Notes under the pieces: generated by a model
Told to the model about the DNA's origin: nothing
The model's input: the letters and a program-made list of their open reading frames with translations, nothing else
Databases searched by the model: none
Program-made: the position numbers and the translations under genes
Assembly (NCBI GenBank): GCA_024137785.1
Contig: JAHRHZ010000116.1
Coordinates: 485,421-549,420 of the forward strand
Length of the DNA: 64,000 bases
Direction: 5' to 3'
From: Ginglymostoma cirratum
Taxonomy: Eukaryota
Shown here: positions 1 through 56,869 of the stretch, in pieces
How the letters are laid out: every line of letters begins with the position of its first letter
Position numbering within the stretch: position 1 is the stretch's first letter

Positions 1-2626
1 GAACTTTTGACGAGGACTCGTCTACTGAGGTGGTATGGGCTGAGGTCAGAAACAGGAGAGGAGAGGTCACACTGCTGGAAGTTTTTTATAAGCCTCCGCA
101 AAGGTCCAGGGATATGGAGGAGAGCATCGGCAAAACGATTCTGGGCAGGAGTGAAAGGAACAGGGTGGTCATTATGGGAGACTTTAACTTCCCCAAAATT
201 GACTGGAAATGCTATAACTCGAGTACGTCGGATGGATCTGTTTTTGTCCAATGTGTGCAGGAGGGTTTCCTGACACAGTATGTCGAAGGGCCGACAAGAG
301 GGGAGGCCACACTGGATCTGGTACTTGGTAATGAACCAGGCCAGGTGTTTGATTCAGTGGTAGGTGAGCACTTTGGAGAGAGTGACCATAATTCGGTTAC
401 GTTCAGTTTAACGATGGAAAGGGACAGGAACATGCCACTGGGCAAGAGTTATAGATGGTGGAAAGGCAATTATAATGCGCTTATGCAAGACTTAGGAGGG
501 ATAGAATGGGGTCGCAAAATGCAGCGGATGTGGACAATCGAAATGTGGAGCTGGTTTAAGGAACAGAGATTGCGTGTCCTTGATAGGTATGTCCCTGTCA
601 GGCAGGGAGGAAGTGATAAGCTAAAGGAACCTTGGTTTACAATAGAAATTGTATCTCTTGTCAAGCGGAAGAGGGAGGCTTATGTGACATTGAGACAAGA
701 TGGTTCAGACTAGGCGATGGAGAATTACAGATTAGCTGGGAAGGATTTAAAGAGAGAGTTAAGAATAGCAAGGAGGGGACATGAGCAGTCATTAGCAGGT
801 AGAATTAAGGGGAACACTAAAGCTTTCTACAGGTATGTGGTGAATAAAATGATGACTCGGGTAAGAATTGGGCCAGTCAAATAGAGAAGTGGGAAGTTGT
901 GCGTGGACCTGTGGAGATCGGAGAGGTGCTAAACAAATATTTTTCATCTGTTTTCAATCGGGAAAAGGAGAATATTGTAGAGGAGAAGACTGAGATACGG
1001 GCTATTAGACTTAAAAGGATTGAGGTTCGTAAGGAGGAGGTGTTATCAATCCTAGAAAATGTGAAGGTAGATAAATCCCCTGGGCCAAATGGGATTTTTC
1101 CGAGGATTCTTTGGGAAGCTAGGGAGGAGATGGCGGGAACTTTGGCCCTGATCTTTGATTCGTCATTGGCTACAGGTTTAGTACCAGATGACTGGAGGAT
1201 TGCAAATGTTGTGTCCTTGTTCAAGAAGGGCAGTAGATATGACCCAGGTAATTATAGACCATTGAGCCTGACATCTGTTGGAGGAAAAGTTTTGGAAAGG
1301 ATTATAAGAGATAGGAATAATAATCATCTAGCAAGCAACAATTTGATTGGAGATAGTCAACATGGATTCGTCAAGGGCAGGTCGTGTCTCACAAACCTCA
1401 TTGAGTTTTTTAAGAAGGTGACCAAGCATGTGGATGAGGGTAGGGCAGTTGACGTGGTGTACATAGAATTCAGTAAAGACTTTGATAAGGTTCCACATGG
1501 TAGGCTATTGGAGAAAATGCGGAGGCATGGGATTGAGGGAGATTTAGCAGTTTGGATTGGAAACTGGCTTTCTGAAAGAAGGCAAAGAGTGGTGGTTGAT
1601 GGAAAATATTCAGCCTGGAGTCCGGTTACGAGTGGTGTGCCACAAGGATCTGTTGTGGGACCACTGCTGTTTGTCATTTTTATAAATGACTTGGACGCAG
1701 ACATCGGTGGATGGGTTAGTAAGTTTCCAGATGACAGTAAGGTCGGTGGAGTGGTGGACAGTGTGGAAGAATGTTGCAGGTTGCAGGGAGACTTGGATAA
1801 ACTGCAGAATTGGGCTAAAAGGTGGCAAATGGAGTTCAATGCAGATAAATGTGAGGTTATTCACTTCGGGAAGAATAATAGGAAGGCAGAATACTGGGTC
1901 AATGGAAAGATTCTTGGTAGTGTGAATGTGCAGAGGGATCTTGGTGTCCAGGTACATAGATCCCTGAAAGTTGCCACCAAGGTTGATAGTGCTGTTAAGA
2001 AGGCATACGGTGTGTTGGGTTTCATTGGTAGAGGGTATGAGTTCAGGAGCCGTGATGTCATTCTGCAACTGTGCAAAACGCTAGTGCGGACTCACTTGGA
2101 ATATTGCGTACAGTTCTGGTCGCCCCGTTGCAGGAAGGATGTGGAAGCATTGGAAAAGGTGCAGAGGAGATTTACCAGGATGTTGCCTGGTCTGGAGTGA
2201 AGGTCTTCTGAGGAAAGGCTGAGGGACTTGGGTCTGTTCTCATTGGAGAGAAGAAGGCAAAGAGAGGATTTAATAGAGACCTACAAAATGATCAGAGGAT
2301 TAGATCGGTTGGACAGTGAGAGTCTTTTTCCTCGGATGATGACGTCGGCTAGTACGAGGGGGCATAGCTGCAAATTGAGGGGTGATAGATTTAAGACAGA
2401 TGTCAGAGGCAGGTTCTTTACTCAGACAGTGGTAAGGGCGAGGAATGGCCTGCCTGCCAATGTAGTTAACTCGGCCACATTCGGGGCATTTAAACAGTCC
2501 TTGGATAAGCATATGGATGATGAGGGGATAGTGTAGGGGGTGGGCTTAGATTAGTTCACAGGTCGGAGCAACATCGAGGGCCGAAGGGCCTGTTCTGCGC
2601 TGTATTGTTCTATGTTCTGTGTTCTA
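1..2626 (+). mobile_element. CR1-clade LINE, ORF2 (APE endonuclease + reverse transcriptase) with stops/frameshifts and intact 3' end
   Basis: ORFs 30-713 (MGDFNFP, LDLVL, SDHN endonuclease motifs), 899-2200 (PGPNG, QHGF, GVPQGSVVGP, FPDD RT motifs) and 2228-2536 (CR1 C-terminus). Ends in a (TTCTAT)-like tail near 2605-2626. Confidence 0.95.
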
Positions 2627-4316: not shown

Positions 4317-4353
4317 AGTTTTTGTGTGGTGCTAGCATCATTCTGTCATAGTG
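4317..4353 (-). other. Recombination signal sequence of the 4.4-kb V pseudogene
   Basis: Minus strand: CACTATG, 21-bp spacer (short), ACAAAAACT, directly after TAT CAC TGC ACT GTG (YHCTV). Confidence 0.75.
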
Positions 4354-4797
4354 AGTCACAGTGCAGTGATACAGCGTTGGTCAACTGCTTAAACTGGTAA
4401 ATTAATTTTCATTCTGAAGTCCCACAGATGAAGGATTTTTTGCAAATTCTGCAGTATCTTCAGTAGCTCTGGAGTGTTTGTTCAGAATAAACTCCGGCAT
4501 TGTGTCTGAGCGCTGCCAGTACAAATACAACTAATTATCGTTGTAATCTTTCGTAGTAGGTCAATTGCAACGCCGCTGCGTCTATTCTAACACCTGAAGT
4601 GAGCGGCTGAGTGACAGAATTTCCAAGATTCATATCTGATATAGAAAAATATGAATAACTAAAAGTACACATTTGGACAGGAGTATACAAACCCAGACAC
4701 GCTTCGATTTAGACCATGCTTGATAAATTGTGCCAGCAGAATTACGCACACCTGTGAGAAATGCCTCCAAAGGAGCACAAATTTTGAATAGCCTGAT
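4354..4797 (-). pseudogene. TCR alpha/delta V pseudogene (family A)
   Basis: 46-nt leader 4752-4797 with ATG mutated to ATC (IRLFKICAPLEAFLT-G/gt). Acceptor tatcag, then V exon 4354-4635: MNLGNSVTQPLTS...LYLYWQRSDTMPEFILNKHSRATEDTAEFAKN...FTSL...YHCTV, with stops and frameshifts. Confidence 0.85.
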
Positions 4798-12326: not shown

Positions 12327-12365
12327 AGTTTTTGTACATGTTGACTGTGTCCCTATAACAGTGTG
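12327..12365 (-). other. 23-RSS of the intact V at 12.4 kb
   Basis: CACACTG, 23-bp spacer, ACAAAAACT. Confidence 0.92.
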
Positions 12366-18508: not shown

Positions 18509-20358
18509 AATACCAAACACTAGTTTAACATGATTGGATCAGAATTCCAGAATTGTTCTGTTGGAAGAGAGATGCAGATCCTGGCCCTTTGTAATGCTGA
18601 TCAAGCCAACGGCAAACGTGTAAAAAGCACCAATGTCGTTTGCCAATATTTTAGGGCAGTCATACTGATCAGAGAGATGTAAGTAGACGGGAGATCTGCA
18701 CAGGGTTCGCTTGGTAGTGTCATCACAGTAGTTTCTTTCGCGGTTTATAATTGAAAACATTGAATTATATGTGACTATGAAACCCTCTGGTGGCAACATT
18801 GAAAACTTTACACAGTGAGCAAAGTGAACATCTCTCTCTGGGCCCATTTCTTGTGCATCTTATTGGAAAAATAGGTTGCAACCAAGTCAACTACTTAACC
18901 AAAGACGATGCCCCGTGTAGTATATCAAATCACGTACATTTCTGAGTTTTCATTTTCTCATCAATGACGTTTTGTTTCGATTTGTAAACTTGTATATCAT
19001 TCTGTCCATATCCTACCCTCTTTTTAGTTTCCCTAGTTGCCTCATTTTCTGTCCTCTGCTCGTATTGAATATGTTCTTTTTTAAACATTCATGTTGTCTC
19101 CGTATCCGGCGCGATTACTCTTCAGTTCCACCTATCAGTGTTTCTAGCATCCTTCATGTCGTGTCTTTATACATTTTATTTCAATATTGAGTGTAATAAA
19201 GCACATTGGCTCAATCCGAGGCTCACAACAAAATGTTTTTCGCGAAATAGTGATAAAGAAAATTAGAACCTCAATGTAAGTACTTATTTCTTTCTAGATT
19301 TTGCCATCAGACTCAGATTAAAATTAGACAAGCGTTTTGCAGGAAAATCCCCATCATTTGTACTTCAGAAGCATCGCAGGAATATGTGTAGATTAACTGC
19401 GAGCGGATTCAAAGGCCACTTAAAAAACTCCATGAATTAATCAGACAATTTACATCCTCATTTGGGGTGTCTTGCCGTAAAGTGAAAGCATCTCCTCCCT
19501 CTACGCCAGACTTTCTGGCGTGAAATTCTACCATAGGAAGTGCGAGTATGGTGGTCTGGCAAAGCACACACAAGCAGGTCCAATTAAAATGTTGGCTGTG
19601 TTGTCACTTCCTATCAGCAATTTTTTCTGAGAAAATTAATTGCACATGTAAATATAAAGAAAACTGATTTGGTGGAAGTAGAAATTAACAAAAACTTTTC
19701 GATTTGTGAGATAGGACTTCTGGGTGGAAAAAAGATAAGTAAAACGTTAAGCACTGCATTCGCCACGACAGGGTGTTAGGAGGTCGAGTTTAACCAATCT
19801 ACCATCAGGGTGGGTTAAACTAAAAATGTTTGCGCAATTGTTTAAATAAAACAATACTGTGAAATGCGATTCGCAATTTATTTTCGAAATGTATTGCCTA
19901 TTTGTTAGTCCATTTCTCCGAATGGCTTTTTTTTTGTCCTTTGCTCGTATTAGAACTGTACAGTTATTCCTGCTCTCTCTCTGTCCCAAATGAAAACTGT
20001 ATTTCATCCGTCTATGTTTCCAGTTTTGTTCATGACTCATCTTTGCAACTTTGTCTTCGATACTCAGCACGTTTGAAACACATTTGCTCGATTCTGGAAT
20101 AGCTGGCAAATAATAACCGAAGAAAATTGAAAGTTGCATTCTAAGAAAAAAAAAATAAAATATGTTACATTTGGAATCGAGTTATTTTGCATTGTGACAA
20201 GGACAGGTTACCAAGGCAACAGGGTCAGGAGGAATGTGATGAAGACCTTCAACATTGCTACTTTGTCTCCGTCATAGTAGTGTTACAGGAGTGGATAGTA
20301 GAAACAGCTGTCCACGCGTAATTCTGATGACTTGACTGTGGTGGATTCTATCCTTTTG

Positions 20359-22369
20359 CGAACAAAAACAAAGTTGCTGCAAAAGCTCAGCAGGTCTGGC
20401 AGCAACTGTGGAGGAGAGAATTGAGTTAACGTTTCGGGTCTGGTGACCCTTCCTCAGAACTAATGGTGGCTGTGAAAACGTCAGTTTATATGCCAAAAAT
20501 AAGGATGTGGGTAGGATAGGGAGTAATTGATAGGATAGAGCCCAAAGAGAGAGAAAGACAGTTGGACAGACAAAGGAGCTGCTAACACTCAGGCTAGCAG
20601 GGTGAATAGTTGTTACTGGGGACTGTTAGTGACTAACAACAGGGGATCTGTAGTGGCAGGCTAAGTGGTAATAAGGCCTGGTGTGTGCGGTGGGGGGCTG
20701 GGACACGGGAGAGTTTAGGCCCTAAAATAATTGAACTCAATATTGAGTCCGGAGGGCTGTAGGGTCCCCAAGAGGAAAATGAGCTGTTGTTCCTCCACTT
20801 TGCGTTGGGCTTCACTGGAACACTATAGCAAGCCGGAGATAGAGATGTTGGCCAGGGAGCAGGGTGGTGCATTGACGTGGCAGGCAAGAGGTAGTTCAGG
20901 GTCTTTTTCTGCGAGTAGAACGTAGATGTTCTGCGAAGTCGTCGCCAAGTCTACTCTTCATTTCCCCAATGTCGACGAGACCACATTGTGAGCAGCGAAT
21001 GCAGTAGACTAGATTATTGGAAGTGCAGGTGAAGTGTTACTTCACCTGAAGGGTATGTTTGGGCCCTTGGATACTGGGGAGGGATGAGGTCAATGTTCAG
21101 GTGTTACACCTTCGCCGGTTACAGGGGAATGTCCCCTAGGGCTGTGGCGAAGTGTTAGTGGTGAAGGAAGTGTAGACCATGGTGCCCCAAAGGGAACGGT
21201 CCCTGCAGAAGGCAGACAAGGGAGGGGAGTGGAATATGTGTCTGGAGGTGGCATCTTGCTGGAGGTGGCAGAAATGACGTCTGATGATCTTGTGGATGTG
21301 GATGATGGTGGGATGGTAGGTAGCGAAAAGTGGAACCCTATCGTTGTTGCGGGAGGGAAGAGAAGGGGTGAGAACAGAAGTGCGGGAGACGGGTCGGACC
21401 CGATTGAGGGCTCTGTCAACAACGGAGCTGGGGAATCCTCGGTTGAGGAAGAATGTGAACATTTCGGAGGCTCCCTTGTCGAATATGGCCTCATCTGAAA
21501 AGATGCAATGGAGACGGAGGAACTGAGAGAATGTGATGGATTCTTTACAGGAAGTGGGGTGTGAGGATGTATCGTCCAGGTAGCCATGGGAGTCGGTAGG
21601 TTTGTAATGGGTACCTCCTCCCTCCTCAGTATCCAAGGGCCCAAACATACCCTTCAGGTGAAGCAACATTTCACCTGCACTTCCAACAATCTGGCCTACT
21701 GCATTCGCTGCTCACAATGTGGTCTCCTCTACATTGGGGAAACAAAGCGTAGACTTGGCGACCACTTCACAGAACATCTACGTTCTACTCGCAAAAAAGA
21801 CCCTGAATTACCTGCTGCCAGCCACTTCAATGCACCACCCTGCTCCCTGGCCAACATCTCTGTCTCCGGCTTGCTACAGTTTTCCAGTGAAGCCCAACGC
21901 AAGCTGAAGGAACAATACCTTATTTTCCACTTTGCTATGCTAAAGCCCTCCGGACGCAATATTGAGTTCAATAATTTTAGGACCGAAACTTTCCCATGTC
22001 CCAGGGCCCCCACTCCACGCACTAGGCCTTGTTACCACATAGCCTACCACTACTCACCCCCTGTTGTTAGTCACTAACAGTCTCCATTAACAACTATTCA
22101 CCCTCCCAGCCTGATCGTTAACAAGTCCTTTGTCTGTCCAACTGTCTTTCTCTCGCTTTGGGCTCGATACTATCGCTTACTCCCTATCTCGATTACGGCC
22201 CTATTTTCGGCGTATAGACCGACGTTTTCCCAGCCGCCATCAGTTCGTGGAAGGGTCACCAGACCCGAAACTTTAACCCTGTTTTCTCCTCCACAGATGC
22301 TTCCAGACCTGCTGAGCTTTTCGAGAAACTTTGACTTACATCATCCGCAGTTTTTTTTTTTGGTTTCTT
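20359..22369. mobile_element. Penelope-like retroelement with inverted arms
   Basis: Minus ORF 21136-21669 (YKPTDSHGYLD..SSHP...SQFLRL, RGFP; RT C-terminus). Plus ORF 21586-22077 (YCIRCSQCGLLYIGETKRRLGDHFTEH; GIY-YIG). The arms are inverted copies. Candidate TSD TCCTTTTG at 20351-20358 and 22370-22377. Confidence 0.93.
20424..20461 (-). ncRNA. Minimal hammerhead ribozyme motif
   Basis: AGUU-CUGAGGA-A-GGGUCACCAGACCC-GAAA-CGUU-AACU. Confidence 0.75.
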
Positions 22370-22842
22370 TCCTTTTGTGGTTGTCCTGGGCAGATGAAAA
22401 TTTAATCCAGACAACAATGAGGTGGTAAGAGTGAATAGGCAACACAATATTTCGGCTACAGTTCTAAACAACGTTTCTGATTTAGTTCTCAATACCAGAT
22501 AAGTGGAGGTCACCACTTAGGAAGTTGGAATTCTAAGACTCCACTTCATCATAACGAACAATATGTTGAACTCAAATTCAGTTATTCCTCACGAATACCA
22601 GGCAATCTGGTTAATTATCTCTTTGATGGGCGAATTGTGTGACTGAGTGTGACTCTAAGATAATAAGTCTAAACCTTAATAGACTCCATGTTGTTCTGTA
22701 TGTGGGCAGAAACTACTTCAGTTTATGAAGATTTGCAAATGTCAGCGAAGACTGCACAATGCAAAGGAAATCTCTCGCCTTTAGTTCTTATACTCGAGGA
22801 AATGATGCTCATGACGTCTTATAACTTGATTGTGCTTGTGTC

Positions 22843-27958: not shown

Positions 27959-28412
27959 ATGCAGCTACTCAGCATCTGAATTGCGTGTGGAGAATTTCAA
28001 ACAGGTAAATTTAGGGGCAATAAACTTCACATTGTTTTTACAAATCATATTTAAAATTGACACCAGATTGACATTTTAGAATTGATACCTCTTTTTCCTT
28101 TCAGATTTGATTCATTGCGATTCTGTCACTCAGCCAGTCTTCTCAGATCTTCGGATAGAAGCAGAGGCAGTGACTCTCTTCTATACCTCTGATACTGCAT
28201 TGAGCAGATATGCATTGCTCTGGTGCCAACAGCACCCAAAACACATAACCTGAGTATACTTTTTGGAAGATACTGAAGGTGATGAGTAAACAGAAACTTT
28301 TGCTGACTATCGTTTCTCTGCAAACTTGAGATCTCCAAGAAATTCACCAGTTTGACTATCACAGGACGAGAACTGACTGACGCTGCTGTGTATTTCTGCA
28401 CTTTATTAGACA
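27959..28412 (+). pseudogene. TCR V pseudogene (family A)
   Basis: Leader 27959-28004 MQLLSI*IACGEFQT-G/gtaaat and acceptor tttcag. Exon from 28105: DLIHCDSVTQPVFSDLRIEAEAVTLFYTSDTALSRYALLWCQQHP...RFSA...KKFTSLTITGRELTDAAVYFCTLL. First Cys lost; frameshifts and stops. Confidence 0.92.
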
Positions 28413-28451
28413 TACAGGGATGAGAAACGTTCTCATCCCTACACAAAAACT
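28413..28451 (+). other. Damaged 23-RSS
   Basis: TACAGGG, 23-bp spacer, ACAAAAACT. Confidence 0.8.
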
Positions 28452-30049
28452 GCCTTAGGAAGGTATTTGGGACTCCATCAGTGGCGTTTACGCTAAGTCC
28501 AGGAGAACTACAAAGTGCAGTCAGGAGCTCAAAATCATACCGAAAGAAAACCAAAGTAACCTCGGATCAACCTGTCAAGCAACTGTTTCCTGGCACTGTT
28601 GGACAAATAAAAACTCTAGTCTCCGAGCACACTCACAAGTACAGAACAGAATCATCTGTGAGCACACCTGTTCTCATCCCCACCCACAACAAATTTTTGA
28701 AGCGAGATTTGTGGACAGTGACCCGAATTTCAATAAACAGATACAACCCAAATAATCAGTTTGAATTTATTATGAATTGTTCCACTCCTGAAATACCGGT
28801 AAAGTGAGAATGAAAGCGTAGTCTGTTAATTATCAGCATCAAACGAAAGAGTTAATAACATATTCTCTCACGGAAGACAGCACGAATTAAAACAGACATT
28901 GAGAGAATACAAAATTGCACCTGTTTTCAGAAATGTTCTCTGAAATTGTCAAATTTGCCCAGTATGTTCAAGCCATCCATGATGCAGAAACTCACTCTGG
29001 GCAAATACATCCTTTATGACTAACTGAGGCTTTGAATCTGGGATACTGACACTGGTGATTGAGAAAGAGCTGCTTAAATTGACAGGCAGTAAAACATCGG
29101 TAAACACAATGGGAGAAAGTAGATGGCGTGGCTGAATTCACTGAAGGGTGCTGAATATAAGCAGGAGACCGAGATATATAGACAATTTAAGGATATATTA
29201 TAGGGGGAGAAGTAGACCAGTGGATCTATTGAGATTGCTATGCCGTAATAAAACGTCACCAGTGAACTATTTCCGTTCAGTTTGAAACCCGAGGTGTGAG
29301 AGACTGGAATATTTTCAGAGTTGACGCTTTAGCATTTAAACAGATTGTTAATTGCTGATTCAAAGAAGTTCCAGGATGCCTCTGTACCTATTAAATTGGA
29401 GAATAAATTATTCCTCAAGCATTTGGAAGCAGACTTGATGAGTTACTGCAGTGCTGCTTATGGCACATTGTCGTCTGCAGCTTCTCATCCCGCTGGTCAG
29501 GAAATATTTCCTTCAGCTGTCTCGACGTTTCAAATAAATATGATCATTTTATTAAGGGCAATGAGGAGGTTCTTGCAGTTTCTACGTCTACTGCACGCAG
29601 ATAGCCAAGTGAGCAGATTCCCATCACATTTACAAATTGTGCATGCTATAGTTTGAGCGGAGATTGCCAAAACAGCCCTCATGCCATAATGCAACCCTTT
29701 CAAATAATCACGGCAAATTTAATACATTCCTTACGCCTCTGTCATTCCAGATAGAGGACCTATTAGAAAAATTAGCATCCAATGAGTTACACTAGATTAA
29801 AGTCACTGTTGCGATGTCAGAAATGAGACAACAAGCTGAACACAGCAAATGTATGCAAAGACAGAAATATCATAGGGACAAAAAAATTTGCATGGACATC
29901 ATTAATGCACACGGTTTGTTCGGCCTCGTGTATATAGTGAGACAAAGAAACAGAAACAGGGTGAGAGAAGGGGAGACTGGATCCACTCTAGGATGCTGAA
30001 AATAATCAGCAGGCTGAAATAGATAGAGCATACGACTATAAATAACGGG

Positions 30050-30420
30050 CAGGACATGGTCAATTGGCCCGTTGAGACTGCTATGCCATTCAATGAGATG
30101 ATGACTGTGATCTGATCATTCCTAACCAAAGTGTTTTTTTTAGTTTCTGTTTTCCTTTTTCCCTATAATCAATGAATATACTTAATGACCCAGCATTCAT
30201 AGCCCTCGATTGTAAAGAATTCCACACCATCTAAGAAACTAAGTTCCTGCTTATGTCTGACATAACTGAATAATAGATCAAACTCTGGTTGTATCCTCGC
30301 CCAAGAGGGGAAACATTTTCTCTGCATTTACATGGTAAAGCCCCCGCAAAATTTTGCATGTTTCATTAAGGTCGCATCTCAGTCTTCTAAATTTCAAAGA
30401 AAAATAGCTCAATGTACACA
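30050..30420 (-). mobile_element. Decayed CR1 3' end
   Basis: Resembles the CR1 3' end at 47480-47920. Confidence 0.55.
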
Positions 30421-31339
30421 TTCTCTCTCATAACAAAGTCCCTCTGCACCCGAGTTAACATTCTTGGTGCTGCGTCCAATCTTAGGAGTGACGTGCATAG
30501 TACAAGCAACAATTCCCTTCTTTTGTCCTCCATTCTGCGTGATTTCACTCATCCTAATCCCCTATCCTACTCAGAGCGCACCCAAAGATCTATCAGTTCC
30601 TGGAACCTCCCATACTCTCCGTTGGAGTAATAGAATTGATACAACTCCAGCATAATTTGGGGCAGATCATTTCTTACCATAATAATTTGCTCCTAAAATA
30701 AACTGTCCCCATGTCTCCTCTGATTCCTTTGCAATATAGTTTTATCCCGTGATAGGCCAGCATAATAGGAAGTTTGGTAAATATTAATAGGATTGGACAG
30801 CGCCAGTTTAGGCTTATGAAATGCAAATGGTGTTAACCAAAGTCTATGTAAATGTACCTTGTAGAATAGACAAGCTGTGACGACATTTTGGTGAATTTGA
30901 ATATTCTGAAAACATTTGGTAAACTCCTGCATAAAATGATAGCGGGAAACAGTCAACCAATGGCGATTGGGATAATTTATTGTCATGTATCTAAAATTAG
31001 TTGACAGGCAGGAATCCCGGTGTTCACAATGAAATGGTGTTGCCGTCCAGCCCAATGATGAAGAGCAGAATCTCATGCATGTACATCAGACTTCGACTGC
31101 AGACAGCCAATAACTTGTGTCCTCAAACCGAATCCCTCTTCTGTTGATTCCTAAACTTTTGTGACTGACGATCAGAATCCAACATTCCACTGACATGCTT
31201 TCTCTACGAGTGGCTGGAAGATAGTCTCTCGTTTTTAATACATCCTCAGGAGACTTGGAGTCACCAAAGTCATTTGCTCTCCTATTTGCTTTCTCAAGCA
31301 GTGTGTCATTCCAATTCTTGTTTTCTCTTCGCAAATATA

Positions 31340-31707
31340 ATGAAATTTTCAGTTTCTGTTTTCATCATCTTCTCAGGGAGAGCTACACAAACTGGAATCA
31401 CGCCAGTTTAAGGAATACTGCTTTGGTTATTCGGTATCAAGTCGGAGGTGATCTTGACTCAACTAGATACTGTGAGACTAACGTTTGGGTTTGACACAGG
31501 CAGATATCACATTTACTGGTGCCAGGAAAGTCCCACGAAGGGTCTGCAATAACTAATCTAGTACTTTAGTGAATAGGGCATGAATTTAAATCGCGAGGCT
31601 GGAACACGAGTTGCTGCTTGCAAAGTCCTTTCAAGAAATATCTTCACTTTGGCTATATCAGGCCATTCAGGATGTAAGACAGCCTGACAACATATTGTGC
31701 ATAATGG
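31340..31707 (+). pseudogene. IgH-like V pseudogene (TAILV or IgHV candidate)
   Basis: Leader-like MKFSVSVFIIFS-G at 31340-31376. One frame from 31434 reads GIKSEVILTQLDTVRLTFGFDTGRYHIYWCQESPTKGLQ*LI*YFSE*GMNLNREAGTRVAACKVLSRNIFTLAISG, then frameshifted TYCA and heptamer-like CACATGG at 31708-31714. Confidence 0.72.
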
Positions 31708-31859
31708 CACATGGGATAGAACGATTACATTCTCAAAGTATTGTTTTCTTGCTCTCTCTTGGCCACATAATGGTCCTGGTTTCCTGATTTAACAACTCGC
31801 TGCATAAATGTCCATGTCCTCAAGCCGACTGTCTTATTTAGGTACAATCATAAGGCCTT

Positions 31860-32470
31860 CAGAACATAAAGACTGAAGCACAAGTAGTCCATTCAGTCCA
31901 TCGAGAGCCTTGCACCACGATATATTATCACGGTTGATCTGATGATCGTCAACACCACTTTACTGCCTTTTCCCCATGAACATTCACCCCATATTAATTA
32001 GAAGTTTTCCCTCAATCTGTCTTGAAGATGCTTATCGACTCAGCTCTCTGAAGTTAAAAATTTCACAGGTTTATTTCCGGTCGATGGAAGAAATTATTTT
32101 TCATTTTTGTCGTAGAAGTGAGATAACTTATTCTGAGATTATGATTTCTGGTCCGAGACTCTTCCTCAAGGGAAATAAATTCCTTATACCTGTATTGTCA
32201 TAGATAATGAATTGTCACAATATTTGCTCCTCTGCTGCCTACTGAATTTTTTGTGGAGTATTGAATACACACTTCTGGTTTTAATAGTGCTCTTGTTTTA
32301 TTCCTAAACTTTACCCACAAGATACCATTTGAAGAACTTTCCATGGTATTGTCCATCCCTACAACAGTAACTCACTACTTCATTAATAATGCGACGCCAC
32401 ATCCTATTTTGCGCAGTTCCCTGTATAGCCTGAAGATTCTATACCCCATTTATTTCTGTCCTGCCCATCC
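31860..32470 (-). mobile_element. Decayed CR1 fragments
   Basis: A 3'-end-like segment from 31860 and an endonuclease-like segment near 32300-32470. Confidence 0.5.
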
Positions 32471-33799
32471 CCCTACCTTGTTTCTCTGACGGAAACAATT
32501 ACTGAAGCCGACAAATTCATGCACGTGCTCATTGAAGGAATAAGGAAAACGTATTCAGCAGGAAATGACAGAGATGCTGAGAGAGCACAAAATACTCTCC
32601 ACATCCTACATCGTCGGGTCACATAACATGAAAAAGGCGTAGTAATCAGATGAGAGGCAGATGTACAGTAGAAGTTAGTGAGATGTGAGTTGAAATGCCA
32701 GGCAGATAGTTGTAAACACATTGAGGAGTGTTAAACTCAGAAACGAAGAGAGCAAATTGGAGAGGGATGTGGAGAGATAAATAGGAAACAGATGGAAAAG
32801 TCACAGTGCACACAGAAGGAGAAAGTAGGGGATACATCCAAGGAGTTCGAGACTTGCACGTTTGAAAACCTCTTTATATATCGAACAAGAATTCAAAACT
32901 ATTGCTTAAGTCCGTAGCCATTGGGAATTTATGAATTCTGTAAATATCGATTCATAGCTTTGAGTGTGACCAGTGTATGGAAGTCTCTTTTAAAATGATT
33001 TGCTGTTATGAATTAATTGGCTTTTTTGTATTGATTAGGGCTGGCTAAGTCGCATTCGTACCTGAATGCCAATCATGGAATCCGTCCAAAGAACGTTTAA
33101 TAAATCCTAGAGTCATCTATGAGATAAAGAGTATAAATCAGGTAAGGTTTCTCATAAAATGTGAATAATAGTTCCATTCATAAGTATGATGAGTTACCCT
33201 TAGATTATTATCTGATTTCCATCAGAAAAAATGAACGACATTGACTTTGTGCAATCGTAAAATCAACCTTACATGTGATGTTCTTCTTCACTTGTCTATC
33301 CATATTAATCATCATCAGATGGATTATAACCGTTGAAGAAGGCATTTCACCAGCCACGTCTACAGGGTACTTCAGAGCGGGAAACATATTCTCATCTTAA
33401 CGTTGACACTGAAATCACTTGAAATAAAAATTCACTTGACACATGAATGTGAAAAGTCCACACTTTCCTGATACAAAAACAAACACGCAAATGGATTATG
33501 CAGAAAAAGAAATAGCAAACTACTTTGAAAGAAACCACCGTGCTTCAAGTTGTGACTTGAAAAGCATTCTTTGTCAATGTGGAAGCATTCCCTGATAACG
33601 ATCAAGATGGCATAATAGTTTAGAAGGATTCTATTTGCTGCCTGCTACAACAGTACCTGCTCGAGACATGAAAAAGTGAAGTTATCACAGCCTGAGAAAC
33701 GACACCAGGTGGCTGATTACGGGATTGTGAATGCGTTTATTCAAAATTTCCATCATTATTTTATTTTGTTTTGTTTTACGACTTATTTATACAACAATG

Positions 33800-39048: not shown

Positions 39049-39485
39049 ATGATTGCATCTCATTTGGAGTCTTGCCATACATCCATTTAGCTGTACTGAC
39101 TATTCCTCGGTTTATTTTTATTGGTTATTCCCCACTGATGTGGATAGAAAAATGATTTCGTTCAACTTAATATAAATTGTGAATCTTGTAGGTGATTGTT
39201 GAGGCGATGCAGTTTAACAGACAGTGACCACATCACCGTGACTGAGGGAGATGATGAGCAGTTGTTCCGTAATTTCAGAGCGACAGTAGGTATGGATATA
39301 TACCGACTATATTCTCGCAGATCCATGGAGATTCTGCTGCAGGGAAGCCAGTACAGTGGGAACGCAAAGAGATTTCCAGGGGACAGATTTTCCTCAAAGC
39401 TTCATCGCACGAACTTAATCATCCAGCTGAATATTTCGAAAACAGACCTGACAAGTTCTGCAATGCATTTCTGTGCACTGGGACC
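39049..39485 (+). pseudogene. TCR V pseudogene
   Basis: Decayed leader from 39049 and acceptor ttgtag at 39191. GDC*GDAV*Q...ITVTEGDDEQLFRNF...IYRLYSRRSMEILLQGSQYSGNAKRFPGDRFSSKLHRTNLIIQLNISKTDLTSSAMHFCALG. First Cys and Trp lost. Confidence 0.88.
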
Positions 39486-39524
39486 CATAGAGACTCATAG
39501 CTGGTCTGACCCTGTGCAAAAACT
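39486..39524 (+). other. Damaged 23-RSS
   Basis: CATAGAG, 23-bp spacer, GCAAAAACT. Confidence 0.8.
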
Positions 39525-40329
39525 GTCAAAGTCTCATGACAACACATCAGGCAAATAGTGAGGTAAGCAGTGTATCTGAAATGTTTTCAAATTTTGCCGC
39601 GGTATGACATATGTTTCCATGTAAATACTTAGATATTTTCATAACAAATGTATTAGTGAAATATGCCAATGTCACTCTTTGTGAATACTAAGCAAAAAGC
39701 AAGTGTATTTAGCACATTTCTTGATGCCACAAAATGATTAACTGCTGCAGCTATGAGAATGCAGTCAACAAACGGAAGCCAGCATTGAACTTTAGAAGTT
39801 AATATGCCAAATGAATTCATTGGTTCAATGGTGATTAGTGTTGCTTCACTATTTTCGAGACCTTACCTCCTTTTGTTTCAAAAGGGTGTTCCTATTATCT
39901 ATTATGCCAATTGCATCGATCCTGCGACATGAGACCTAATCTTAAAATCCTCTGAAGCAGATGTGCTCGGGATGAGAATTAAATCTCGTCTGAGGTGTTC
40001 ACTGTTTTGTCCTTGTTCGGGTAATTATGTTGCAACTGAATCTTCACGTACAGAAATACAGAAATAAAACCTCCAAACGTGCATATCAGGCTGAAGAGTG
40101 CTATTCTTTCTAGAAGTTATTTAACTGATGACGAATAGGTAGACAAGCAGCCGACTCTTTGCGCCTCAATCAGCAACAAATTACCACCAGTAACGAATGG
40201 AGCGAAGGACATTTCACAGAAAGCTGAGACATTGAGAAGGGGAAATAGAATACTTTCACGCTCTAGAGCGTTGACAAATAGTCGCAGACGTCCATCATCA
40301 ATATACCTGTGGAGAGAAGAACACTTAAA

Positions 40330-47345: not shown

Positions 47346-49070
47346 ATGCGATTTCTCAGTTTTTAAATTTCATTAGGTCCATTTCTGGCAGTTAAGTGTG
47401 AAGTCTCTGTAATGTTCCAAATATCATTTCCTTTTGTGAAAATGCTGGCTTATTTGCTTCTGTGCATATAGGGATTATATTTGATAAGAATATAAGAACA
47501 TAAGAAGTCGGAGCAGGAGTAGGCCATCCGGCCCCTCCAGCCTGCCCCGTCATTCAATAAGATCATGGCTGATCTTATTGAGGCTTGGCTCCACTCACCC
47601 GCCCATACATCATAACCCTTAATCCCTTTACTGTTCAAAAATTTATCTCGCCTTGCCTTAAACACATTCAGCGAGGTAGCTTCAACCGCTTTACTGAGCA
47701 GGGAATTCCACAGATTCACAACCCTTTGGGTGAAGAAGTTCCTCCTGACATTAGTCCGACATCTGCTTCCCTTTATTTTGAGACTATGCCCCCGAGTCCT
47801 AGTTTCACCTGCTAGTGGAAACAACCTCCCTGACTCCACCTTGTCTATTCCCTTCATAATCTTATATGTTTCTATAAGATCTCCCCTCATTCTTCTGAAT
47901 TCTAATGGAATATCCCAGCCTACACATTCTCTCCTCATAATCCAAAGCTCTCAACTCTGCAATCAATCAAGTGAATCTCCTCTGCAACCCCTCCAGTGAT
48001 AGTATACCCCTTCTCAAGAAAGGAGACCAAAACTGCACGCAGTACTCCAAGTGTGGCCTCACCAGTACCCTATAGAGCTGCAGAATAGCCTCCCTGTTTT
48101 TACACTCCATCCCTCCAGCAATGGCAGACAATATTCCATTTGACTTTTTAATTACCAGCTGCACCTGCAAACCTACTTTTAACGATTCATGCACAAGGAC
48201 ACCCAAGTCCCTCTGCACAGCAGCGTGCTGCAATTTATTTTACCATTTAAAACATAGCCCATTTTACTGTCATTCCTACCAAAATGAATGACCTCACACT
48301 TATTAACATTGTACTCCATCTGACAGACATTTTACCACTCACTTAGAGTATCAATATCCCTCTGTAGACTTTCAGTGCCTTCTGCACACTTTGCTCTACC
48401 ACTCATCTTAGTGTCGTCTGCAAATTTTGACACACTACACTTAGTCCCCAACTCCAAATCATCTCTGTAAATTGTAAACAATTGCGGTCCCAACACTAAT
48501 CTCTGAGGCACACCGTTAGCCACTGACCGCCAACCAGAAAAAAAAAACACCCATTTACCCCTACTCTTTGCTTTCTACTCGTCAACCGTTACTCCATCCA
48601 TGCCTATACATTATCTGTAATACCATGCAATTTTATCTTATGTAGCAGCCTTTTGAATGGTACCTTGTCAAATGCCTTCTAGAAATCCAGATTCATTGCA
48701 TCCACAGGCTCCCCATTGTCCACCATGCAAGTAACTTCCTCAAAGAATTCCACCAGATTTTAGATTGGAGTTATGGAGATTATATTTCTCAATGACTGCT
48801 TTCTGAATTTAAGATGGAAGTGCTCGCGTTGACATTGACCTGTACCTAAGAGAAGTAATCAAACAGTTTTTATTCGCCTGATACAGATAATACCCAAGCA
48901 TGCAAACCAAGCTTATATTATCGAAACACTGAAGGGATTCAGAGAAAAAAGCGGATTTTGCTTTGTGTAATTTCTCTATTGAGCTTCAGACGAAGAATAA
49001 CTTCACTAGTTCGTCTATCTGTGGACAGTGATGATGATTTCTGCACTGCATTACTGTGTTCTAAGGTTTT
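47346..49070 (+). pseudogene. TCR V pseudogene (family A) with a CR1 in its intron; leader 47346-47391, V exon 48764-49070
   Basis: Leader MRFLSF*ISLGPFLA-G/ttaagt. Exon DWSYGDYISQ*LLSEFKME..ALTLTCT...*YR*YPSMQTKLILSKH...KADFA..NFSIELQTKNNFTS...SALHYCVLR, then CACAGCA at 49071-49077. Confidence 0.85.
47484..48757 (-). mobile_element. 5'-truncated CR1 LINE
   Basis: ORFs 48332-48550 (GVPQ..VLGP, KFADDTK), 47967-48233 and 47450-47938, with a (TTCTTA)-like tail. Confidence 0.93.
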
Positions 49071-49479
49071 CACAGCAATAGACTATGATTATACCGCTGT
49101 ATGTAATGTGTTAATGGTAAATCCAGATGGGTTGGGTTTGTGTACAATCATAGGCCGATAACACCACAGTGTGCAGAATGCTGACAAGCTCTCAAATGTA
49201 TGTCGAAGGGAAACCAATTAAATAGTCGACGTAAACACAACTTAAACAGTCACTCCACTGTTTCCAGGAGTGGCTGAGGAAATAAACGGAGGAACAAAAA
49301 GGAACTGTCGGAGAAATGAGAGAATTCCATTTGAGAGCTGTGAATTTCGAAGTTTTCCAGACAGCTGAAGACTTACCACGTGTACACAATGGAAGGCGCT
49401 CATTAATCTTGTCTGTTTCGGTTGTTGTTCGAATGGGAGGCCGTGATCAATGACATACCAGAAAGACACGCCTGACTTC

Positions 49480-50023: not shown

Positions 50024-50326
50024 GTGCTCGTGGTAAGAATTTTATTTCGACAAGAGCCAATCACAGTGATTCATTTTGAAGGAGATTCGGTGATTTCAGA
50101 CATCAGTTTCAGAAGTTCCAAAACGCCTGGTTCATTTTAATTAGGACGCCTGGACGGTGATAAAGGTTTTCAAATCTCCATAACGAACCACACAACTTAT
50201 TTTAGAGCACAAATTTTGAGGTCATGATTTCCTATATGTATTGACAAGACGAAAATTGAGGGGTATTTCACCTATCAGTGACCTGCGACTGTTTGACAGC
50301 AGAGTGTATTACTGCGGATTGGGACA
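50024..50326 (+). pseudogene. TCR V pseudogene
   Basis: QEPITVIHFEGDSV...CIDKTKIEGYF/ISDLRLFDSRVYYCGLG, followed by GTCAGTG, a 23-bp spacer and TTAAAAAAA (50327-50365). Confidence 0.75.
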
Positions 50327-50445
50327 GTCAGTGACAGGGCACAGGGGGATATTGGTTTAAAAAAAGCGCGATGGGGCAATTTGATGCAGTATCAGCTCCC
50401 GAGTGAGATCTATGCACTGCTAATATTAGATGAGTAAAGCGCAGA

Positions 50446-51830: not shown

Positions 51831-52344
51831 TAAGGTCCTCTCAAGACTGACCAGGCACGCGACCTTCTGTACAAAATTAATGGATTGAGGTCATCGGGGA
51901 GGGGTGTATTTTCAGTGATTCTACTCGAATTCGCTTTGCAACCCGATCGATCGTACAAGCCTTGATCCAGTCGATGTTTGTTCGTGTGGTTAGTCTGGGA
52001 CAGTTGTGATAACACAAGTCCCACCGTTTATTAATGCAGGTCTCAGGTTTCAGTGTTCCTTCACTCCATAGTGAGGAATTGTTCAATGAAATATTGTTCT
52101 GGGTTATAAGAAAACCCTATGATTCCATGTATGTTATTATTAAAGATTGTCTTCTTCATTGCTCCTGTATTTTGCCACTTTTTTTACAGGTTATTAAGAC
52201 AAAGCAAAATGGAAAATATGTACCTATTGCTTTGTTCCAAGTGCAAGGTCAATAAAAAATGACAAGATCAGTCTGAGTAATCAATAAGGGAAATAAACTG
52301 GACATCTCTATCAATGTTCAATAAACGGTTTTTAGAAGAAAGAA

Positions 52345-53915
52345 CAAATAATAATGCAACACAGGGGCAGGACCTTCTATTCTGCAAGGCTCCATAGACA
52401 CATGCTGCCCTTCCATACAAACACTGTCTTGCCTTTGAAGTTCCGTATCCCTCTATTCCTTCGCTATTGATGTATTCCTCCAGATGCTTCTTGAATGTTA
52501 CTATTGTGTCTGCGTTCACCAGCTCCTCTGGCCGTATGTTGCAGGCACTTACGATCTTTGTTCGAAAATCTTGACTGGCACACCTCCCCCAAATCCAGCA
52601 CATTGAACCTGTAGTTCAAAGAAATTGAAGCCTCTACGCTGGGAAGAAGCCTCATAATTTCCAATCTATCCATGCCATTCATAAACTTATAATCTTTCTC
52701 CAGGTCACAGCTCAACCTTCTGCGCTCCACTAAAAGCTACCCCAGTATATCCAAGAGAGATAGAAAGAACTGCCGATGCTGGAGTCAGAGATAATACAGT
52801 GTGAAGTTGGAGAAACACTGCAGGCGAAACAGTACCAGAGGAGCAGAAAAGCTGACATTTTGGGTCGGGAGCCTTCTTCCAAAAATCTGTCTATCCAACG
52901 TTCCTTCACAGCAAAAAATCCCCTATAACAGGTAACATCCTGTTAAACGTCTTCTGTGACCTCTCCAAATTTCTTCTGATAGTGTGGTGACATCAGAACT
53001 GTAAGCAATTTTCCAAATGCGGCCTAGCTGGTATGTTATAAAATGCAGAATAACCTGCCTGTCAGTATAATCAATGACCCTTTCAATGAAGGTAAGTGTG
53101 CCCCAAGTCTTTTTTACTAAATTATCTAACTGCATTGCCACCTTCCGTGAACTGTGGTACTGCCGACCCAGATCTCTCCGCATATCAGCACTACAAAGGG
53201 TTCTATCATTCACTGAATGATTTCAACACCTCACATGTGACGGAATAAACTCCATCTGCCATTTTCTGCGCATGATTCCAACAGTTCTTTATCCTGCTTT
53301 ATCATCTGACAATTCACCTCACTACCTGCAACTTCAATAATATTCGTATCATGTGCAAACTTAATAATTAGACCAGCCTCGTTAAGCTCCAAAATGTTTA
53401 TGCAGACTACGAACAGCAAAGATCTCAGCTCTTATCCCTGTGGAACACACGCTTGTAACAAGTCTTTACTCTGCAAAGCATCCCTCCATCGCTATCTTTT
53501 GTCTCCTATGACTAAGCTAGTTCCGGATCCATCTTGACAGCTCACCCCTGATATCACGTGAATTCAACTTTTGTGCCAGTCTCCCACAAGGGACCCTGTT
53601 AAAATCTCCACTGAAGTCCATGTACAGTACGTTAAACGCTTTCCTATTCATCATCTTTGTCAAATCCTCGAAAGACTTGATCGAGTCAGTGATCAATTGG
53701 CTTCCTCTGCACAAAAACAAGCTGTCTACTGCTAATAGGTCCATTTGCTTCTAAATCCGCATAGCTTTCGGATCTTAGAATCTTTTCCAATAATTTCACT
53801 ACCAATCACGCTGGTTTTACAGATCTGTAATTTCCTGGATTATACATGATACTGCTCTGAAACAATGAGACAACATTGCTTATTATCCAATCCTCTGCGG
53901 CCTCACCTGTGGTCT
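52345..53915 (-). mobile_element. Decayed CR1 LINE with a nested Penelope terminal repeat (about 52755-52885)
   Basis: ORFs containing LYMDFS.DFNRVP.GRL, KFAHDT, RRDLG and ERRRL..DL. Confidence 0.85.
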
Positions 53916-54576
53916 GATGTTCTATATTTTTAACTGAATCTTTTTGATAATTTGAAAATCAAACTATTTCTCCGGTCATTCGGGATCTGACTATCTATAT
54001 TTATTGACATTTCTCTCTAAGCAGCGGTGTTCGACGTTAGTATCTCAGTTTCCTTGGAAACAGTGCATTGTAACAAGCTAGGATCCTTTGCTGTGGTTAA
54101 GGGATACCTGAGGAGTAATATAATAGTGATATTTAAACTGATGAAGAATATCGATACTCTGTTATGAGAAGATGCTACTACGTTGAGGATTTCAAAAATG
54201 TGTATCATAAAGACAAGACGAGGGAACAAATCGAATAGAATTCAGAAGAATCATCTTTCCGTTTTAGAGTATTGAACTCACCACCAAAACGAAACGTAAA
54301 GTCACATACATCGATGTAAAAGCAAGCCTGAAGATCCGTTGAGACAACAAAGGAATGAGATGTATAGATTTTAGAAAAAAAAAACACAACGAGGGAAGAT
54401 TTTCATGTGATTTGTCAGCACCTAATATAGACCACACAAAATTAATTCGATTTCTTATGCTGGAATTTCTATTCATTTTCAATATGAACAAAATTATTTC
54501 ATATTTCGATGATCAGTTACGCTCAGTTCAATATCTAATTGATTATTTACGCTTTATTTAACCCTACATTCCACAA

Positions 54577-54855
54577 ATAAGCAATTGAAACTGTATTACT
54601 AAGCTGGGTTGTTTTCTCACACAGCCAGAAGGAAAAGATGCGACTTTAATTTGTGCCTACATTGGTGATCGCAATTATTTATTCTGGTACCGAGTTCGCA
54701 TTCCAGTGTTACGTGAGTGGTGGCGAATAATTGAAGGCAGGTTTTGCTCGGAAATGGTTTTATGATACAGTCCAGCAGTCAAACAGGATGTACTTGTTCA
54801 CCATCTCTGATCTATAGCTCAGTGACACCGCTGCTTGTTTCTGAGCAACGAAGCT
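54577..54855 (+). pseudogene. TCR V pseudogene
   Basis: LTQPEGKDATLICAYIGDRNYLFWYR, then after a frameshift KAGFARKWFYDTVQQSNRMYLFTISDL*LSDTAACF*ATK. Confidence 0.85.
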
Positions 54856-54894
54856 CAAGATGGTAAGAACGACCGAAAGCCTCGTGCAATAACT
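54856..54894 (+). other. Damaged 23-RSS
   Basis: CAAGATG, 23-bp spacer, GCAATAACT. Confidence 0.65.
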
Positions 54895-56869
54895 GCTGCA
54901 GGTTTCTGGGTCACAGCTGCTTCATGTGAAGGGCTGTTTATAAAAGGATCTCAGAAAATTACACTTCAACACATTACTGCGTGCAGAGACCTGGTCACTG
55001 TGCTCCTAAACATAAATGAAACCTTTCATACCCAATACTGTTTCGAATTATTGCATTCCCTGTGTGAGGACAGAACGACCTGCTGCTTCTTTGGAGAGCT
55101 CTGGGAATCTCCCATTCATATTTAGAGATATAAATGAGGTGGTGTAAAACTACTTTCATCCATGCACAGTTGTTGTGTAAAGAGCTTTTGTCAGAGGAAC
55201 AGATAATATTGCTTTGAGGTATCATTGTGCAATGAAAATTTTGTATATTAGTATTGAGAAAAGACATTGAAATGTGGAATTTCACGCAAAAAGTTTGGCG
55301 AGGTGAGGAAAATCTACAAGAACTGTAATATCCTAATTCAGCTCCTTCCAATGCTAAAGACACCCTATATTTGATAAATGAAGAGTTCAAACTATAATGA
55401 ATTCCTGATGCAGTGTTTTGCGTATTGGAATAAAAACTGTCGTTCAATGATTAATGGAGGAAGAAACTACAAGGATGATGTCATGTTTCCAAGGCACCGA
55501 GGAAAACGGTCTGAAAAACAAAATAATACAAAAGATGAATTGAAAATAAAACAGACGTTAGCTACAAGTATCAGAAGTATTTTGTGAAGATTGTATTTAT
55601 AAGATAAGTTTCAATTTAAAAGTAAAGTTTTCTTTGCTTGCATGATTAACATCGCAATTATCTGCTGAGTCCAACTTCGTTAATTGTTGGAGCCAATATT
55701 TTGTTTGGAAATTTCTGTTGCAACATCTCTAATATATAAACGTACATAAAGTAACTAATCAACATTCTGGGGTATGCTCTTATGTATTCCACGTAAAGGA
55801 ATCAGAAGAAGCCTCATTAAGGCTGTATCAGTTGTTCTTATTCTGAATTCAGTGTACTCTAGTCAATAAAGTTAAAATATCTATGCTGTTCTGCAGCCTA
55901 TCCCTTATCTTGTTCAACTTGTCCATTGCAGCAGTTTGCTGAAATTTGTTGATTAAATCTACCCCTCTTCATAATTTGCTAAAAGATACAGAATAAAAAT
56001 CTGCACCTCAGGCCAACTGCATAGAGAACATATTTGCATTTTAACGATGAGATTGTAAATGTCGGGTCTTTAGCACAAACGAATTGAATGTGAAACAGCA
56101 CTAGTCAAAATGGTGACTTTTTTTTGGTCACAAATTTTTCAAGAGATAAATGCAACAACAGTTATGTTGCCCGATATAAAGCAAAGAAAATAAATTAAAT
56201 TATTTTGCAATTTGCAACTTTATCAAAGCAATTGGTTTCTGAGCATTAGAATTTGCGCCATTATGACCTGCAATGAAATAGGGAAATAAACATACTTAAA
56301 ATTATTATTTTGTTATATTCAACGTTACCAAGGAAAGCTAGTGTGTTTCAAAAAGGGAGAGCGTACAAATAAAGTGAAGGACACTTGACCAATATTGTTT
56401 GTCAATGAAAGTTGCTTCAATTTGCTAAGTTACCAGTCAAGAGTACTGAAGGACTGAGAAATGAGTTAATCCCCGCGGGCAAAATATTAGCAGAACAGAT
56501 GACGGATTTGAACAGGTCGAGTTGGAGCTGAACTGATTCAGTTCGGAGTTGGTAGGATGCTGAGTCATATCCTATCCCGCTGTCAATGGGTTCATTCATG
56601 TTAGTGTCACCAGGTAGATCGAATCAACTTGCACCTCCATTGTACATCAACCGATGTCAGCAGAGATTTGGAAATAAGAACAAATCGAATAGATACTGGA
56701 GGAGGGCTCTTGGCCCTTCGAACTTGTGTGGTCATTCAATTCCATCAGAAACTATCCCTTCATATTCAGCAAACGGTTTTAACCAAAACTTCAAATTTCC
56801 ATTTCAAATTAACAAGTCTATCAAGACCGGTTCAAGGTTTTTCAGAAGATTTGTAGTTCAGGCTGTGGA

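What the first reader, a model, noticed from the sequence alone, without database searches (positions are those of the whole stretch)
31340..31714. IgH-like V pseudogene embedded among TCR V segments (TAILV/IgHV candidate)
Seen: about 76 codons in one frame, GIKSEVILTQ..DTVRLT.GFDTGRYHIYWCQESPTKGLQ*LI*YFSE...RVAACKVLSRNIFTLAI, unlike any neighbour. Known: shark VH domains carry G.QSEV.LTQ, GF.L, KGLEWL.YY.S and RFT.SKD.S.NIF.L, and shark TCR delta/alpha rearrangements can use IgHV and TCR-associated Ig-like V (TAILV) segments. Inference: TGG-TGC is one transition from the TCR-like WY on an IgH-like framework, which fits a TAILV-type hybrid. It is interspersed as a solo V with no D, J or C nearby.
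Basis: partly seen in the sequence, partly recalled or inferred. Interest (0 to 1): 0.8.

Follow-up and report, generated by a model that had tools for sequence, protein, structure and literature searches.

The report
Dead antibody-type V gene among shark TCR genes
This is a badly decayed, non-functional copy of an antibody-heavy-chain-type V gene segment lying among T-cell-receptor V genes of a shark, a leftover of an arrangement that is already known in sharks, so it is ordinary.

Summary
The quoted reading frame is in the sequence exactly as described. It has the layout of a germline V gene: a leader ATG at 31340, a short decayed intron, a V exon at about 31434-31707, and a heptamer-like CACATGG at 31708-31714.

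It is dead. It has four in-frame stops and a frameshift before Tyr-Cys-Ala. About 10 FR1 codons are missing, including the first cysteine. There is no GT/AG splice pair and no nonamer.

It is heavy-chain-like, not TRAV-like:
- Its first piece hits almost only antibody VH chains in the PDB, 58 of the 60 shown. The same segment of two neighbouring V genes puts TCR alpha chains at the top.
- A VH profile scores it at 19.1 bits, reached by 0 of 2000 shuffles. A profile of the window's own TRAV-like genes gives 5.0 bits.
- BLASTP to a gar VH gives E 9e-5. BLASTP to a bamboo-shark TRAV-like protein gives nothing.

The weak points are that Pfam V-set does not hit the pieces and that the FR3 piece alone is no better than chance.

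No shark VH or TAILV sequence could be fetched, so TAILV versus true IgHV is undecided. VH-type V genes inside shark TCR alpha/delta loci are already described. Interest is low.

The parts
31284..31291 (+). ATTTGCTT, one mismatch from the inverted octamer ATTTGCAT, 56 nt upstream of the ATG. A weak, possibly chance, promoter remnant.
   Evidence: motif scan. Not tested against chance.
31340..31376 (+). Leader exon relic: ATG plus 12 codons (MKFSVSVFIIFS) plus the first base of a split Gly codon.
   Evidence: Hydrophobic core read directly. It lies 57 nt before the V exon, as in germline V genes.
31377..31433 (+). Decayed, short leader intron: GG where the GT donor should be, and CG/GG where the AG acceptor should be.
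   Evidence: sequence read directly. The boundaries are inferred from the split codon G|GT.
31434..31486 (+). End of leader (G-I-K-S) and FR1 relic (EVILTQ..LDTVRLTF). About 7 plus 3 residues are missing relative to VH, including the first conserved Cys.
   Evidence: BLASTP to gar VH P0067 with gaps of 7 and 3 residues. MAFFT display.
31487..31549 (+). CDR1-FR2 relic, GFDTGRYHIYWCQESPTKGLQ. This is the best-preserved, VH-diagnostic part, with the conserved Trp at 31517-31519.
   Evidence: PDB phmmer: 58 of the 60 listed hits are VH/VHH, aligned to chain positions about 23-46. VH profile 12.7 bits, 0 of 1000 shuffles.
31550..31606 (+). End of FR2 and CDR2 relic, with stops at 31550 (TAA, at the position of the FR2 Trp of GLEW), 31559 (TAG) and 31574 (TAG).
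   Evidence: Colinear with VH profile columns.
31607..31701 (+). FR3 relic (RVAACKVLSRNIFTLAISGHSGCKTA), stop TGA at 31685, a net 1-nt frameshift, then TAT TGT GCA (Tyr-Cys-Ala) at 31693-31701.
   Evidence: Colinear in the profile alignment, but on its own not above chance: 808 of 1000 shuffles, or 26 of 1000 with YCA added.
31708..31714 (+). Heptamer-like CACATGG (5 of 7 to CACAGTG), 6 nt after GCA. No nonamer at 12 or 23 nt.
   Evidence: The RSS scan found no RSS here, while three minus-strand RSS-23 were found at 12365, 49173 and 57453.

Best explanation
This is the non-functional relic of a germline V gene segment of the antibody-heavy-chain (VH) type, lying on the plus strand inside an array of TRAV-like V segments of an elasmobranch. 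By sequence type and position it belongs to the known class of VH-type V genes housed in TCR alpha/delta loci (shark TAILV or IgHV used by TCR delta; VH-delta of other vertebrates).

Shown: the V-gene anatomy, the VH-like CDR1-FR2, the disabling lesions, and the TRAV-like neighbours.

Inferred:
- It arose by duplication within, or transfer into, the V array.
- It once could rearrange to TCR delta D/J.
- It then decayed under birth-and-death turnover. The same window holds at least five other dead V relics.

It does nothing now. It cannot be spliced, translated into a folded V domain (the first Cys is gone and there are four stops plus a frameshift), or cut by RAG (no usable RSS).
For: - Anatomy: leader ATG at 31340, V exon at about 31434-31707, Trp at 31517, Tyr-Cys-Ala at 31693-31701, heptamer-like at 31708-31714. 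Trp to Cys is 179 nt against 180 expected.
- VH type, PDB: 253 hits at E<=10. Of the 60 shown, 58 are VH/VHH, 2 are VL and 0 are TCR.
- VH type, PDB controls: the same segment of V57k gives mostly TCR alpha chains. V43k has 8 TCR alpha chains among its first 9 hits.
- Whole library of 1.84 billion representatives: 2 hits at E<=0.001. One is a tandem-VH protein (P0003, E 3.1e-4). The other is a repeat protein I take as spurious.
- Profiles: the VH profile (108 of 120 fetched VH kept) gives 19.1 bits, 0 of 2000 shuffles. The TRAV profile gives 5.0 bits, 2 of 2000.
- Blind tile scan: VH profile E 0.014. No TRAV-profile hit at E<=10.
- BLASTP: gar VH 'HV323' E 9e-5, running from the G-x-x-S leader end to KGL. 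The TRAV-like P0001 gives no alignment at E<=100.
- Neighbours are V-set (E 2e-14, 1e-13, 1e-8). Two carry a 23-spacer RSS. The best database hit is a Chiloscyllium punctatum protein at 63% identity.
Against: - Pfam V-set does not hit either piece at E<=10.
- The FR3 piece has 0 PDB hits and is not above shuffles against the VH profile. The VH call therefore rests mainly on about 24 residues of CDR1-FR2 plus colinearity.
- The VH profile comes from bony vertebrates only. No shark VH, TAILV, TRDV or TRGV sequence was available, so no tree was made.
- The TRAV profile has only five sequences.
- The frame join used for the 19.1-bit score was chosen after looking. One frame alone gives 14.3 bits.
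- No RNA or DNA run was listed, so nothing is known about transcription.
- It lies on the strand opposite to the four best-preserved neighbours.
Confidence: 0.72

Rival explanations
1. It is the V of a dead IgH (IgM or IgW) mini-cluster that landed near or in the TCR V array. That would make it a true IgHV relic rather than a TCR-dedicated TAILV.
For: It is VH-like. [quoted passage not shown]
Against: Nothing downstream looks like a cluster. No RSS pairs or J lie within the next kilobases. There is no C1-set domain in any of the 93 ORFs of 85 aa or more. Decayed D, J or C remnants would, however, be missed by these scans.
Confidence: 0.12
2. It is a decayed ordinary TRAV/TRDV segment whose FR2 resembles VH by drift.
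For: It sits in a TRAV-like array with several other dead TRAV-like relics. W-C could come from the TCR-like W-Y by one transition. [quoted passage not shown]
Against: The TRAV profile finds four other relics but not this one. There is no BLASTP alignment to P0001. None of the 60 listed PDB hits is a TCR chain. The G-F...W..Q.P.KGL pattern and the leader end G-x-x-S-x-V match VH.
Confidence: 0.09
3. It is a chance resemblance in non-coding DNA and was never a V gene.
For: No Pfam hit. FR3 is not significant alone. Single-domain E-values are only about 0.01.
Against: Several independent landmarks fall at the right spacing: the leader ATG, the VH-like leader end, Trp, Tyr-Cys-Ala 179 nt after Trp, and CAC just after it. 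0 of 2000 shuffles reach the score. It also lies in a V-gene array.
Confidence: 0.05

Closest known systems
[quoted passage not shown] Deiss et al. 2019 was not held. It is known here only from the citing passages in PMC12227049.
   Same: An IgH-like V sequence lying among TCR V segments with no D-J-C of its own in 64 kb.
   Different: This copy is dead (stops, frameshift, lost Cys, no RSS). Membership of the TAILV clade and use with TCR delta could not be tested.
Shark IgM/IgW heavy-chain V genes used in Ig-TCR delta trans-rearrangements. Criscitiello et al. 2010 was not held. It is described in passages of PMC5931798 and PMC12227049.
   Same: A VH-type CDR1-FR2.
   Different: Shark IgH V genes sit in V-D-J-C mini-clusters. 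No D, J or C was found here.
VH-delta genes in the TCR alpha/delta or TCR delta2 loci of amphibians, birds and platypus (passages of PMC5278385).
   Same: VH-type V genes housed in a TCR locus.
   Different: A different lineage. Those are functional, with a 23-RSS, whereas this one is a pseudogene.
The window's own TRAV-like V segments (12697-12356, 18185-17805, 44085-43618, 57785-57420, all on the minus strand).
   Same: The same kind of gene unit (leader, V exon, RSS) in the same array.
   Different: These have WY-type FR2, hit TCR alpha in the PDB and lie on the opposite strand. The candidate does not match their profile.

Membership tests
Germline Ig/TCR V gene segment | Leader exon, short intron and V exon | tested here: met
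   ATG plus a hydrophobic 12-codon leader at 31340-31376, with the V exon 57 nt later. The GT/AG splice sites are not intact, so the layout is present but decayed.
Germline Ig/TCR V gene segment | Conserved Cys (FR1), Trp (FR2) and Cys (FR3) | tested here: inconclusive
   Trp is present (31517). The second Cys is present only in a shifted frame (31696). The first Cys is absent, falling in a 3-residue gap in BLASTP to VH. This is as expected for a pseudogene.
Germline Ig/TCR V gene segment | Recombination signal: heptamer, 23-nt spacer, nonamer | tested here: not met
   Only CACATGG (5 of 7) is present and there is no nonamer. Neighbours at 12365, 49173 and 57453 pass the same scan.
Germline Ig/TCR V gene segment | Pfam V-set (PF07686) hit | tested here: not met
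   No hit at E<=10 for the 46 and 36 residue pieces. The read-through could not be given to that tool.
VH-type V (IgHV / TAILV / VH-delta) | VH-type CDR1-FR2 (G-F...W-x-x-Q-x-P-x-K-G-L-E-W), with closest matches being VH rather than VL or TCR V | tested here: met
   58 of the 60 listed PDB hits are VH/VHH. VH profile 19.1 bits against 5.0 for the TRAV profile. BLASTP to gar VH E 9e-5 and none to TRAV.
TAILV | Groups with shark TAILV, apart from IgM/IgW VH, in a tree | not testable with these tools
   No shark VH or TAILV sequence could be fetched.
TAILV | Lies within the TCR alpha/delta locus | tested here: met
   It is flanked on both sides by V-set segments whose PDB matches are led by TCR alpha chains. 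The C alpha and C delta genes themselves are not in the window.
TAILV | Found rearranged to TCR delta D-J-C in transcripts | not testable with these tools
   No sequencing run was listed. The relic has no RSS, so present-day use is not expected.
Ordinary TRAV/TRDV | Matches a profile of the locus's TRAV-like V genes and TCR V chains in the PDB | tested here: not met
   No tile hit at E<=10. 0 TCR chains among the 60 listed PDB hits. No shark TRDV set was available.

The most novel reading that the evidence does not exclude
The relic may record a separate, now extinct lineage of VH-type V genes in the shark TCR alpha/delta array. It could be an independent capture of an IgH V, or an old VH framework with a TCR-like W-Y FR2, rather than a dead copy of the living TAILV genes. 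That would date repeated Ig-to-TCR V exchange.
Probability: 0.1. Interest if true: 0.4.

Novelty: new member of a known kind. Interest (0 to 1): 0.2.

Why it matters
It adds one dead copy to the known set of antibody-type V genes inside shark TCR loci. It shows that these genes undergo the same birth-and-death turnover as the TRAV-like genes around them. It bears on how often V genes moved between Ig and TCR loci only if a tree shows it to be a lineage of its own. In itself it has no function and opens no new question.

Tried and rejected
- Pfam on the two stop-free pieces: no V-set hit.
- PDB search with the FR3 piece: 0 hits.
- Representative-library search with piece 1: 2 hits at E<=0.001, one of them a repeat protein that I take as spurious.
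- The search for homologous proteins with piece 1: no candidate in the allowed length range. This says nothing about longer relatives.
- ESM Atlas with piece 1: no usable hit.
- The look-up of sequencing runs on 29500-33500: none was listed. Read laying was therefore not used and expression is untested.
- The first VH profile, built from untrimmed proteins, was poor (232 positions). It was replaced by a trimmed one built from 108 of 120 sequences. I dropped 12 whose match to the query domain did not span positions 5-94.
- Scoring whole frames as single sequences gave depressed scores. I replaced this with tiles.
- blastn of 30000-33500 against the window found only itself, so this is not a local repeat.
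- The octamer near the ATG is only a 1-mismatch inverted form, so I give it no weight.
- The search of earlier findings by place (near) and by sequence returned nothing. The all-words query also returned nothing.
- Papers not held: PMC7909615, PMC7039070 and PMC3222143. Supplements were not opened.
- Papers seen: PMC12227049, PMC5931798 and PMC5278385, as passages found by term only. All others appear as search listings only.
- I searched for TAILV in print. Two papers hold both 'tailv' and 'shark', and only one of them is relevant.

Full report
**Observation**

From 31433 it reads GIKSEVILTQLDTVRLTFGFDTGRYHIYWCQESPTKGLQ*LI*YFSE*GMNLNREAGTRVAACKVLSRNIFTLAI....

- 31340 is an ATG opening MKFSVSVFIIFS plus a split Gly codon.
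- 31714 is the last base of CACATGG, which follows TAT TGT GCA (31693-31701) by 6 nt.

**Anatomy**

The region has the layout of a germline V gene on the plus strand:

| Part | Coordinates |
|---|---|
| Leader part 1 | 31340-31376 |
| Leader intron (57 nt) | 31377-31433 |
| V exon | about 31434-31707 |
| Heptamer-like | 31708-31714 |

It is broken in many ways:
- There is no GT donor and no AG acceptor.
- Stops lie at 31550 (at the position of the FR2 Trp of GLEW), 31559, 31574 and 31685.
- A net 1-nt shift precedes Tyr-Cys-Ala.
- Gaps of 7 and 3 residues in FR1 relative to VH remove the first conserved Cys.
- The heptamer matches 5 of 7 and there is no nonamer.

The spacing is preserved. Trp (31517) to Cys (31696) is 179 nt, against 180 nt in the VH consensus I built.

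**Is it more than chance?**

For:
- I built a VH profile from 108 bony-vertebrate VH domains. These came from the 120 listed. I dropped 12 that did not span the query domain.
- I scanned 3186 six-frame tiles of the window with it. Below E 0.1 it hit tiles over the four neighbouring V genes and three tiles over this region (E 0.014-0.025).
- The read-through with X at the breaks scores 19.1 bits, or 14.3 bits in one frame only. 0 of 2000 shuffles reach it, the highest being 6.8.

Against:
- Pfam V-set hits neither piece at E<=10.
- The FR3 piece has 0 PDB hits.
- The FR3 piece is not above shuffles (808 of 1000 reach its score). With YCA added, 26 of 1000 reach it.

The signal is therefore mainly in about 24 residues of CDR1-FR2, plus colinear landmarks.

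**Which V type?**

| Test | Candidate | Control or comparison |
|---|---|---|
| phmmer of piece 1 against PDB sequences | 253 hits at E<=10. Of the 60 shown, 58 are antibody VH/VHH, 2 are light chains and 0 are TCR. They align at chain positions about 23-46. | The same segment of V57k gives mostly TCR alpha chains (best 5.7e-10). V43k has 8 TCR alpha chains among its first 9 hits. |
| Local profiles | VH profile 19.1 bits | TRAV profile (four window V genes plus bamboo-shark P0001) 5.0 bits |
| Tile scan with the TRAV profile | No tile hit at E<=10 | Finds relics at about 28.1-28.6 kb (+), 39.1-39.6 kb (+), 4.3-4.7 kb (-) and 50.0-50.5 kb (+) |
| BLASTP of piece 1 | Gar 'HV323' VH (P0067), E 9e-5, running from G-I-K-S-E-V / G-V-Q-S-Q-V to KGLQ / KGLE | P0001 (TRAV-like): no alignment at E<=100 |

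In the 1.84-billion-protein representative library, 2 proteins reach E<=0.001. One is a tandem-VH protein (P0003). The other is a repeat protein that I regard as spurious.

**Surroundings**

- Minus-strand V-set segments lie at 12697-12356, 44085-43618 and 57785-57420 (E 1.4e-13, 1.4e-8 and 2.1e-14). A one-stop pseudogene lies at 18185-17805.
- RSS-23 signals lie at 12365, 49173 and 57453.
- The best database hit of V57k is a Chiloscyllium punctatum protein at 63% identity. It was the only hit at E<=0.001 among 9 candidates.
- Earlier AI notes call the genome a nurse shark. I did not verify this.
- Among the 93 ORFs of 85 aa or more, Pfam finds V-set in 3, LINE domains (RVT_1, Exo_endo_phos) and no C1-set.
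- No J-like segment was found.
- The 3.5 kb around the relic has no other copy in the window.

**Interpretation**

This is a dead VH-type V segment in a TRAV-like array. VH-type V genes within shark TCR delta loci, and TAILV, are in print. I saw passages of PMC12227049, VH-delta in other vertebrates in passages of PMC5278385, and IgM/IgW V use by TCR delta in a passage of PMC5931798.

Earlier notes of this scan are leads only and are untested here. They report an intact transcribed VH-type V 36.7 kb beyond the window, three tandem copies 159 kb beyond it, and another relic 202 kb before it.

The mechanism is inferred. The gene arose by duplication or transfer, formerly rearranged to TCR delta, and then decayed neutrally.

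**What stays open**

TAILV versus IgM/IgW-type IgHV is undecided, because no shark VH or TAILV sequence could be obtained.

A TRAV-like relic at about 28.2 kb also reads W-C.

**Verdict**

This is a new (dead) member of a known kind, and interest is low.

Noticed in passing
window 28080-28480 (+): A TRAV-like pseudogene on the plus strand (DSVTQP...LLWCQQHP...RFSANL..., then AAVYFC in another frame). It also reads W-C where TRAV genes have W-Y.
   Followed up: partly
window 39196-39555 (+): An open 120-codon ORF that is a TRAV-like relic (...DRFSSKLHRTNLIIQLNISKTDLTSSAMHFCALGP). It lacks the first Cys and the FR2 Trp. TRAV profile E 2e-6.
   Followed up: partly
window 49120-49200 (-): A good RSS-23 (CACACTG, 23 nt, ACACAAACC) at 49173. 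Only a ...SAFC remnant of a V 3' end lies before it, and the rest of that V is unrecognisable.
   Followed up: partly
window 50160-50340 (+) and 54480-54900 (+), also 4330-4720 (-): Further V fragments: ...DSRVYYC at about 50.3 kb, LTQPEGKDATLICAYIGDRNYLFWYR at about 54.6 kb, and a weak TRAV-profile hit at 4.3-4.7 kb. All four best-preserved V genes are on the minus strand. Most relics, including the candidate, are on the plus strand.
   Followed up: no
window 3-2533 (+); 47453-48239 (-); 52271-53222 (-): LINE-type retroelement ORFs. Pfam reported Exo_endo_phos and RVT_1 among the 93 ORFs, most likely those at 3-2197. The other two places share a similar C-terminal motif (...RGDLIETYK...).
   Followed up: partly
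window 20000-22500: A locally GC-rich stretch (0.48 against about 0.40) with overlapping long ORFs on both strands and near-duplicate ORFs at 20275-20625 (-) and 22078-22425 (+). It looks like an inverted repeat of a mobile element.
   Followed up: no
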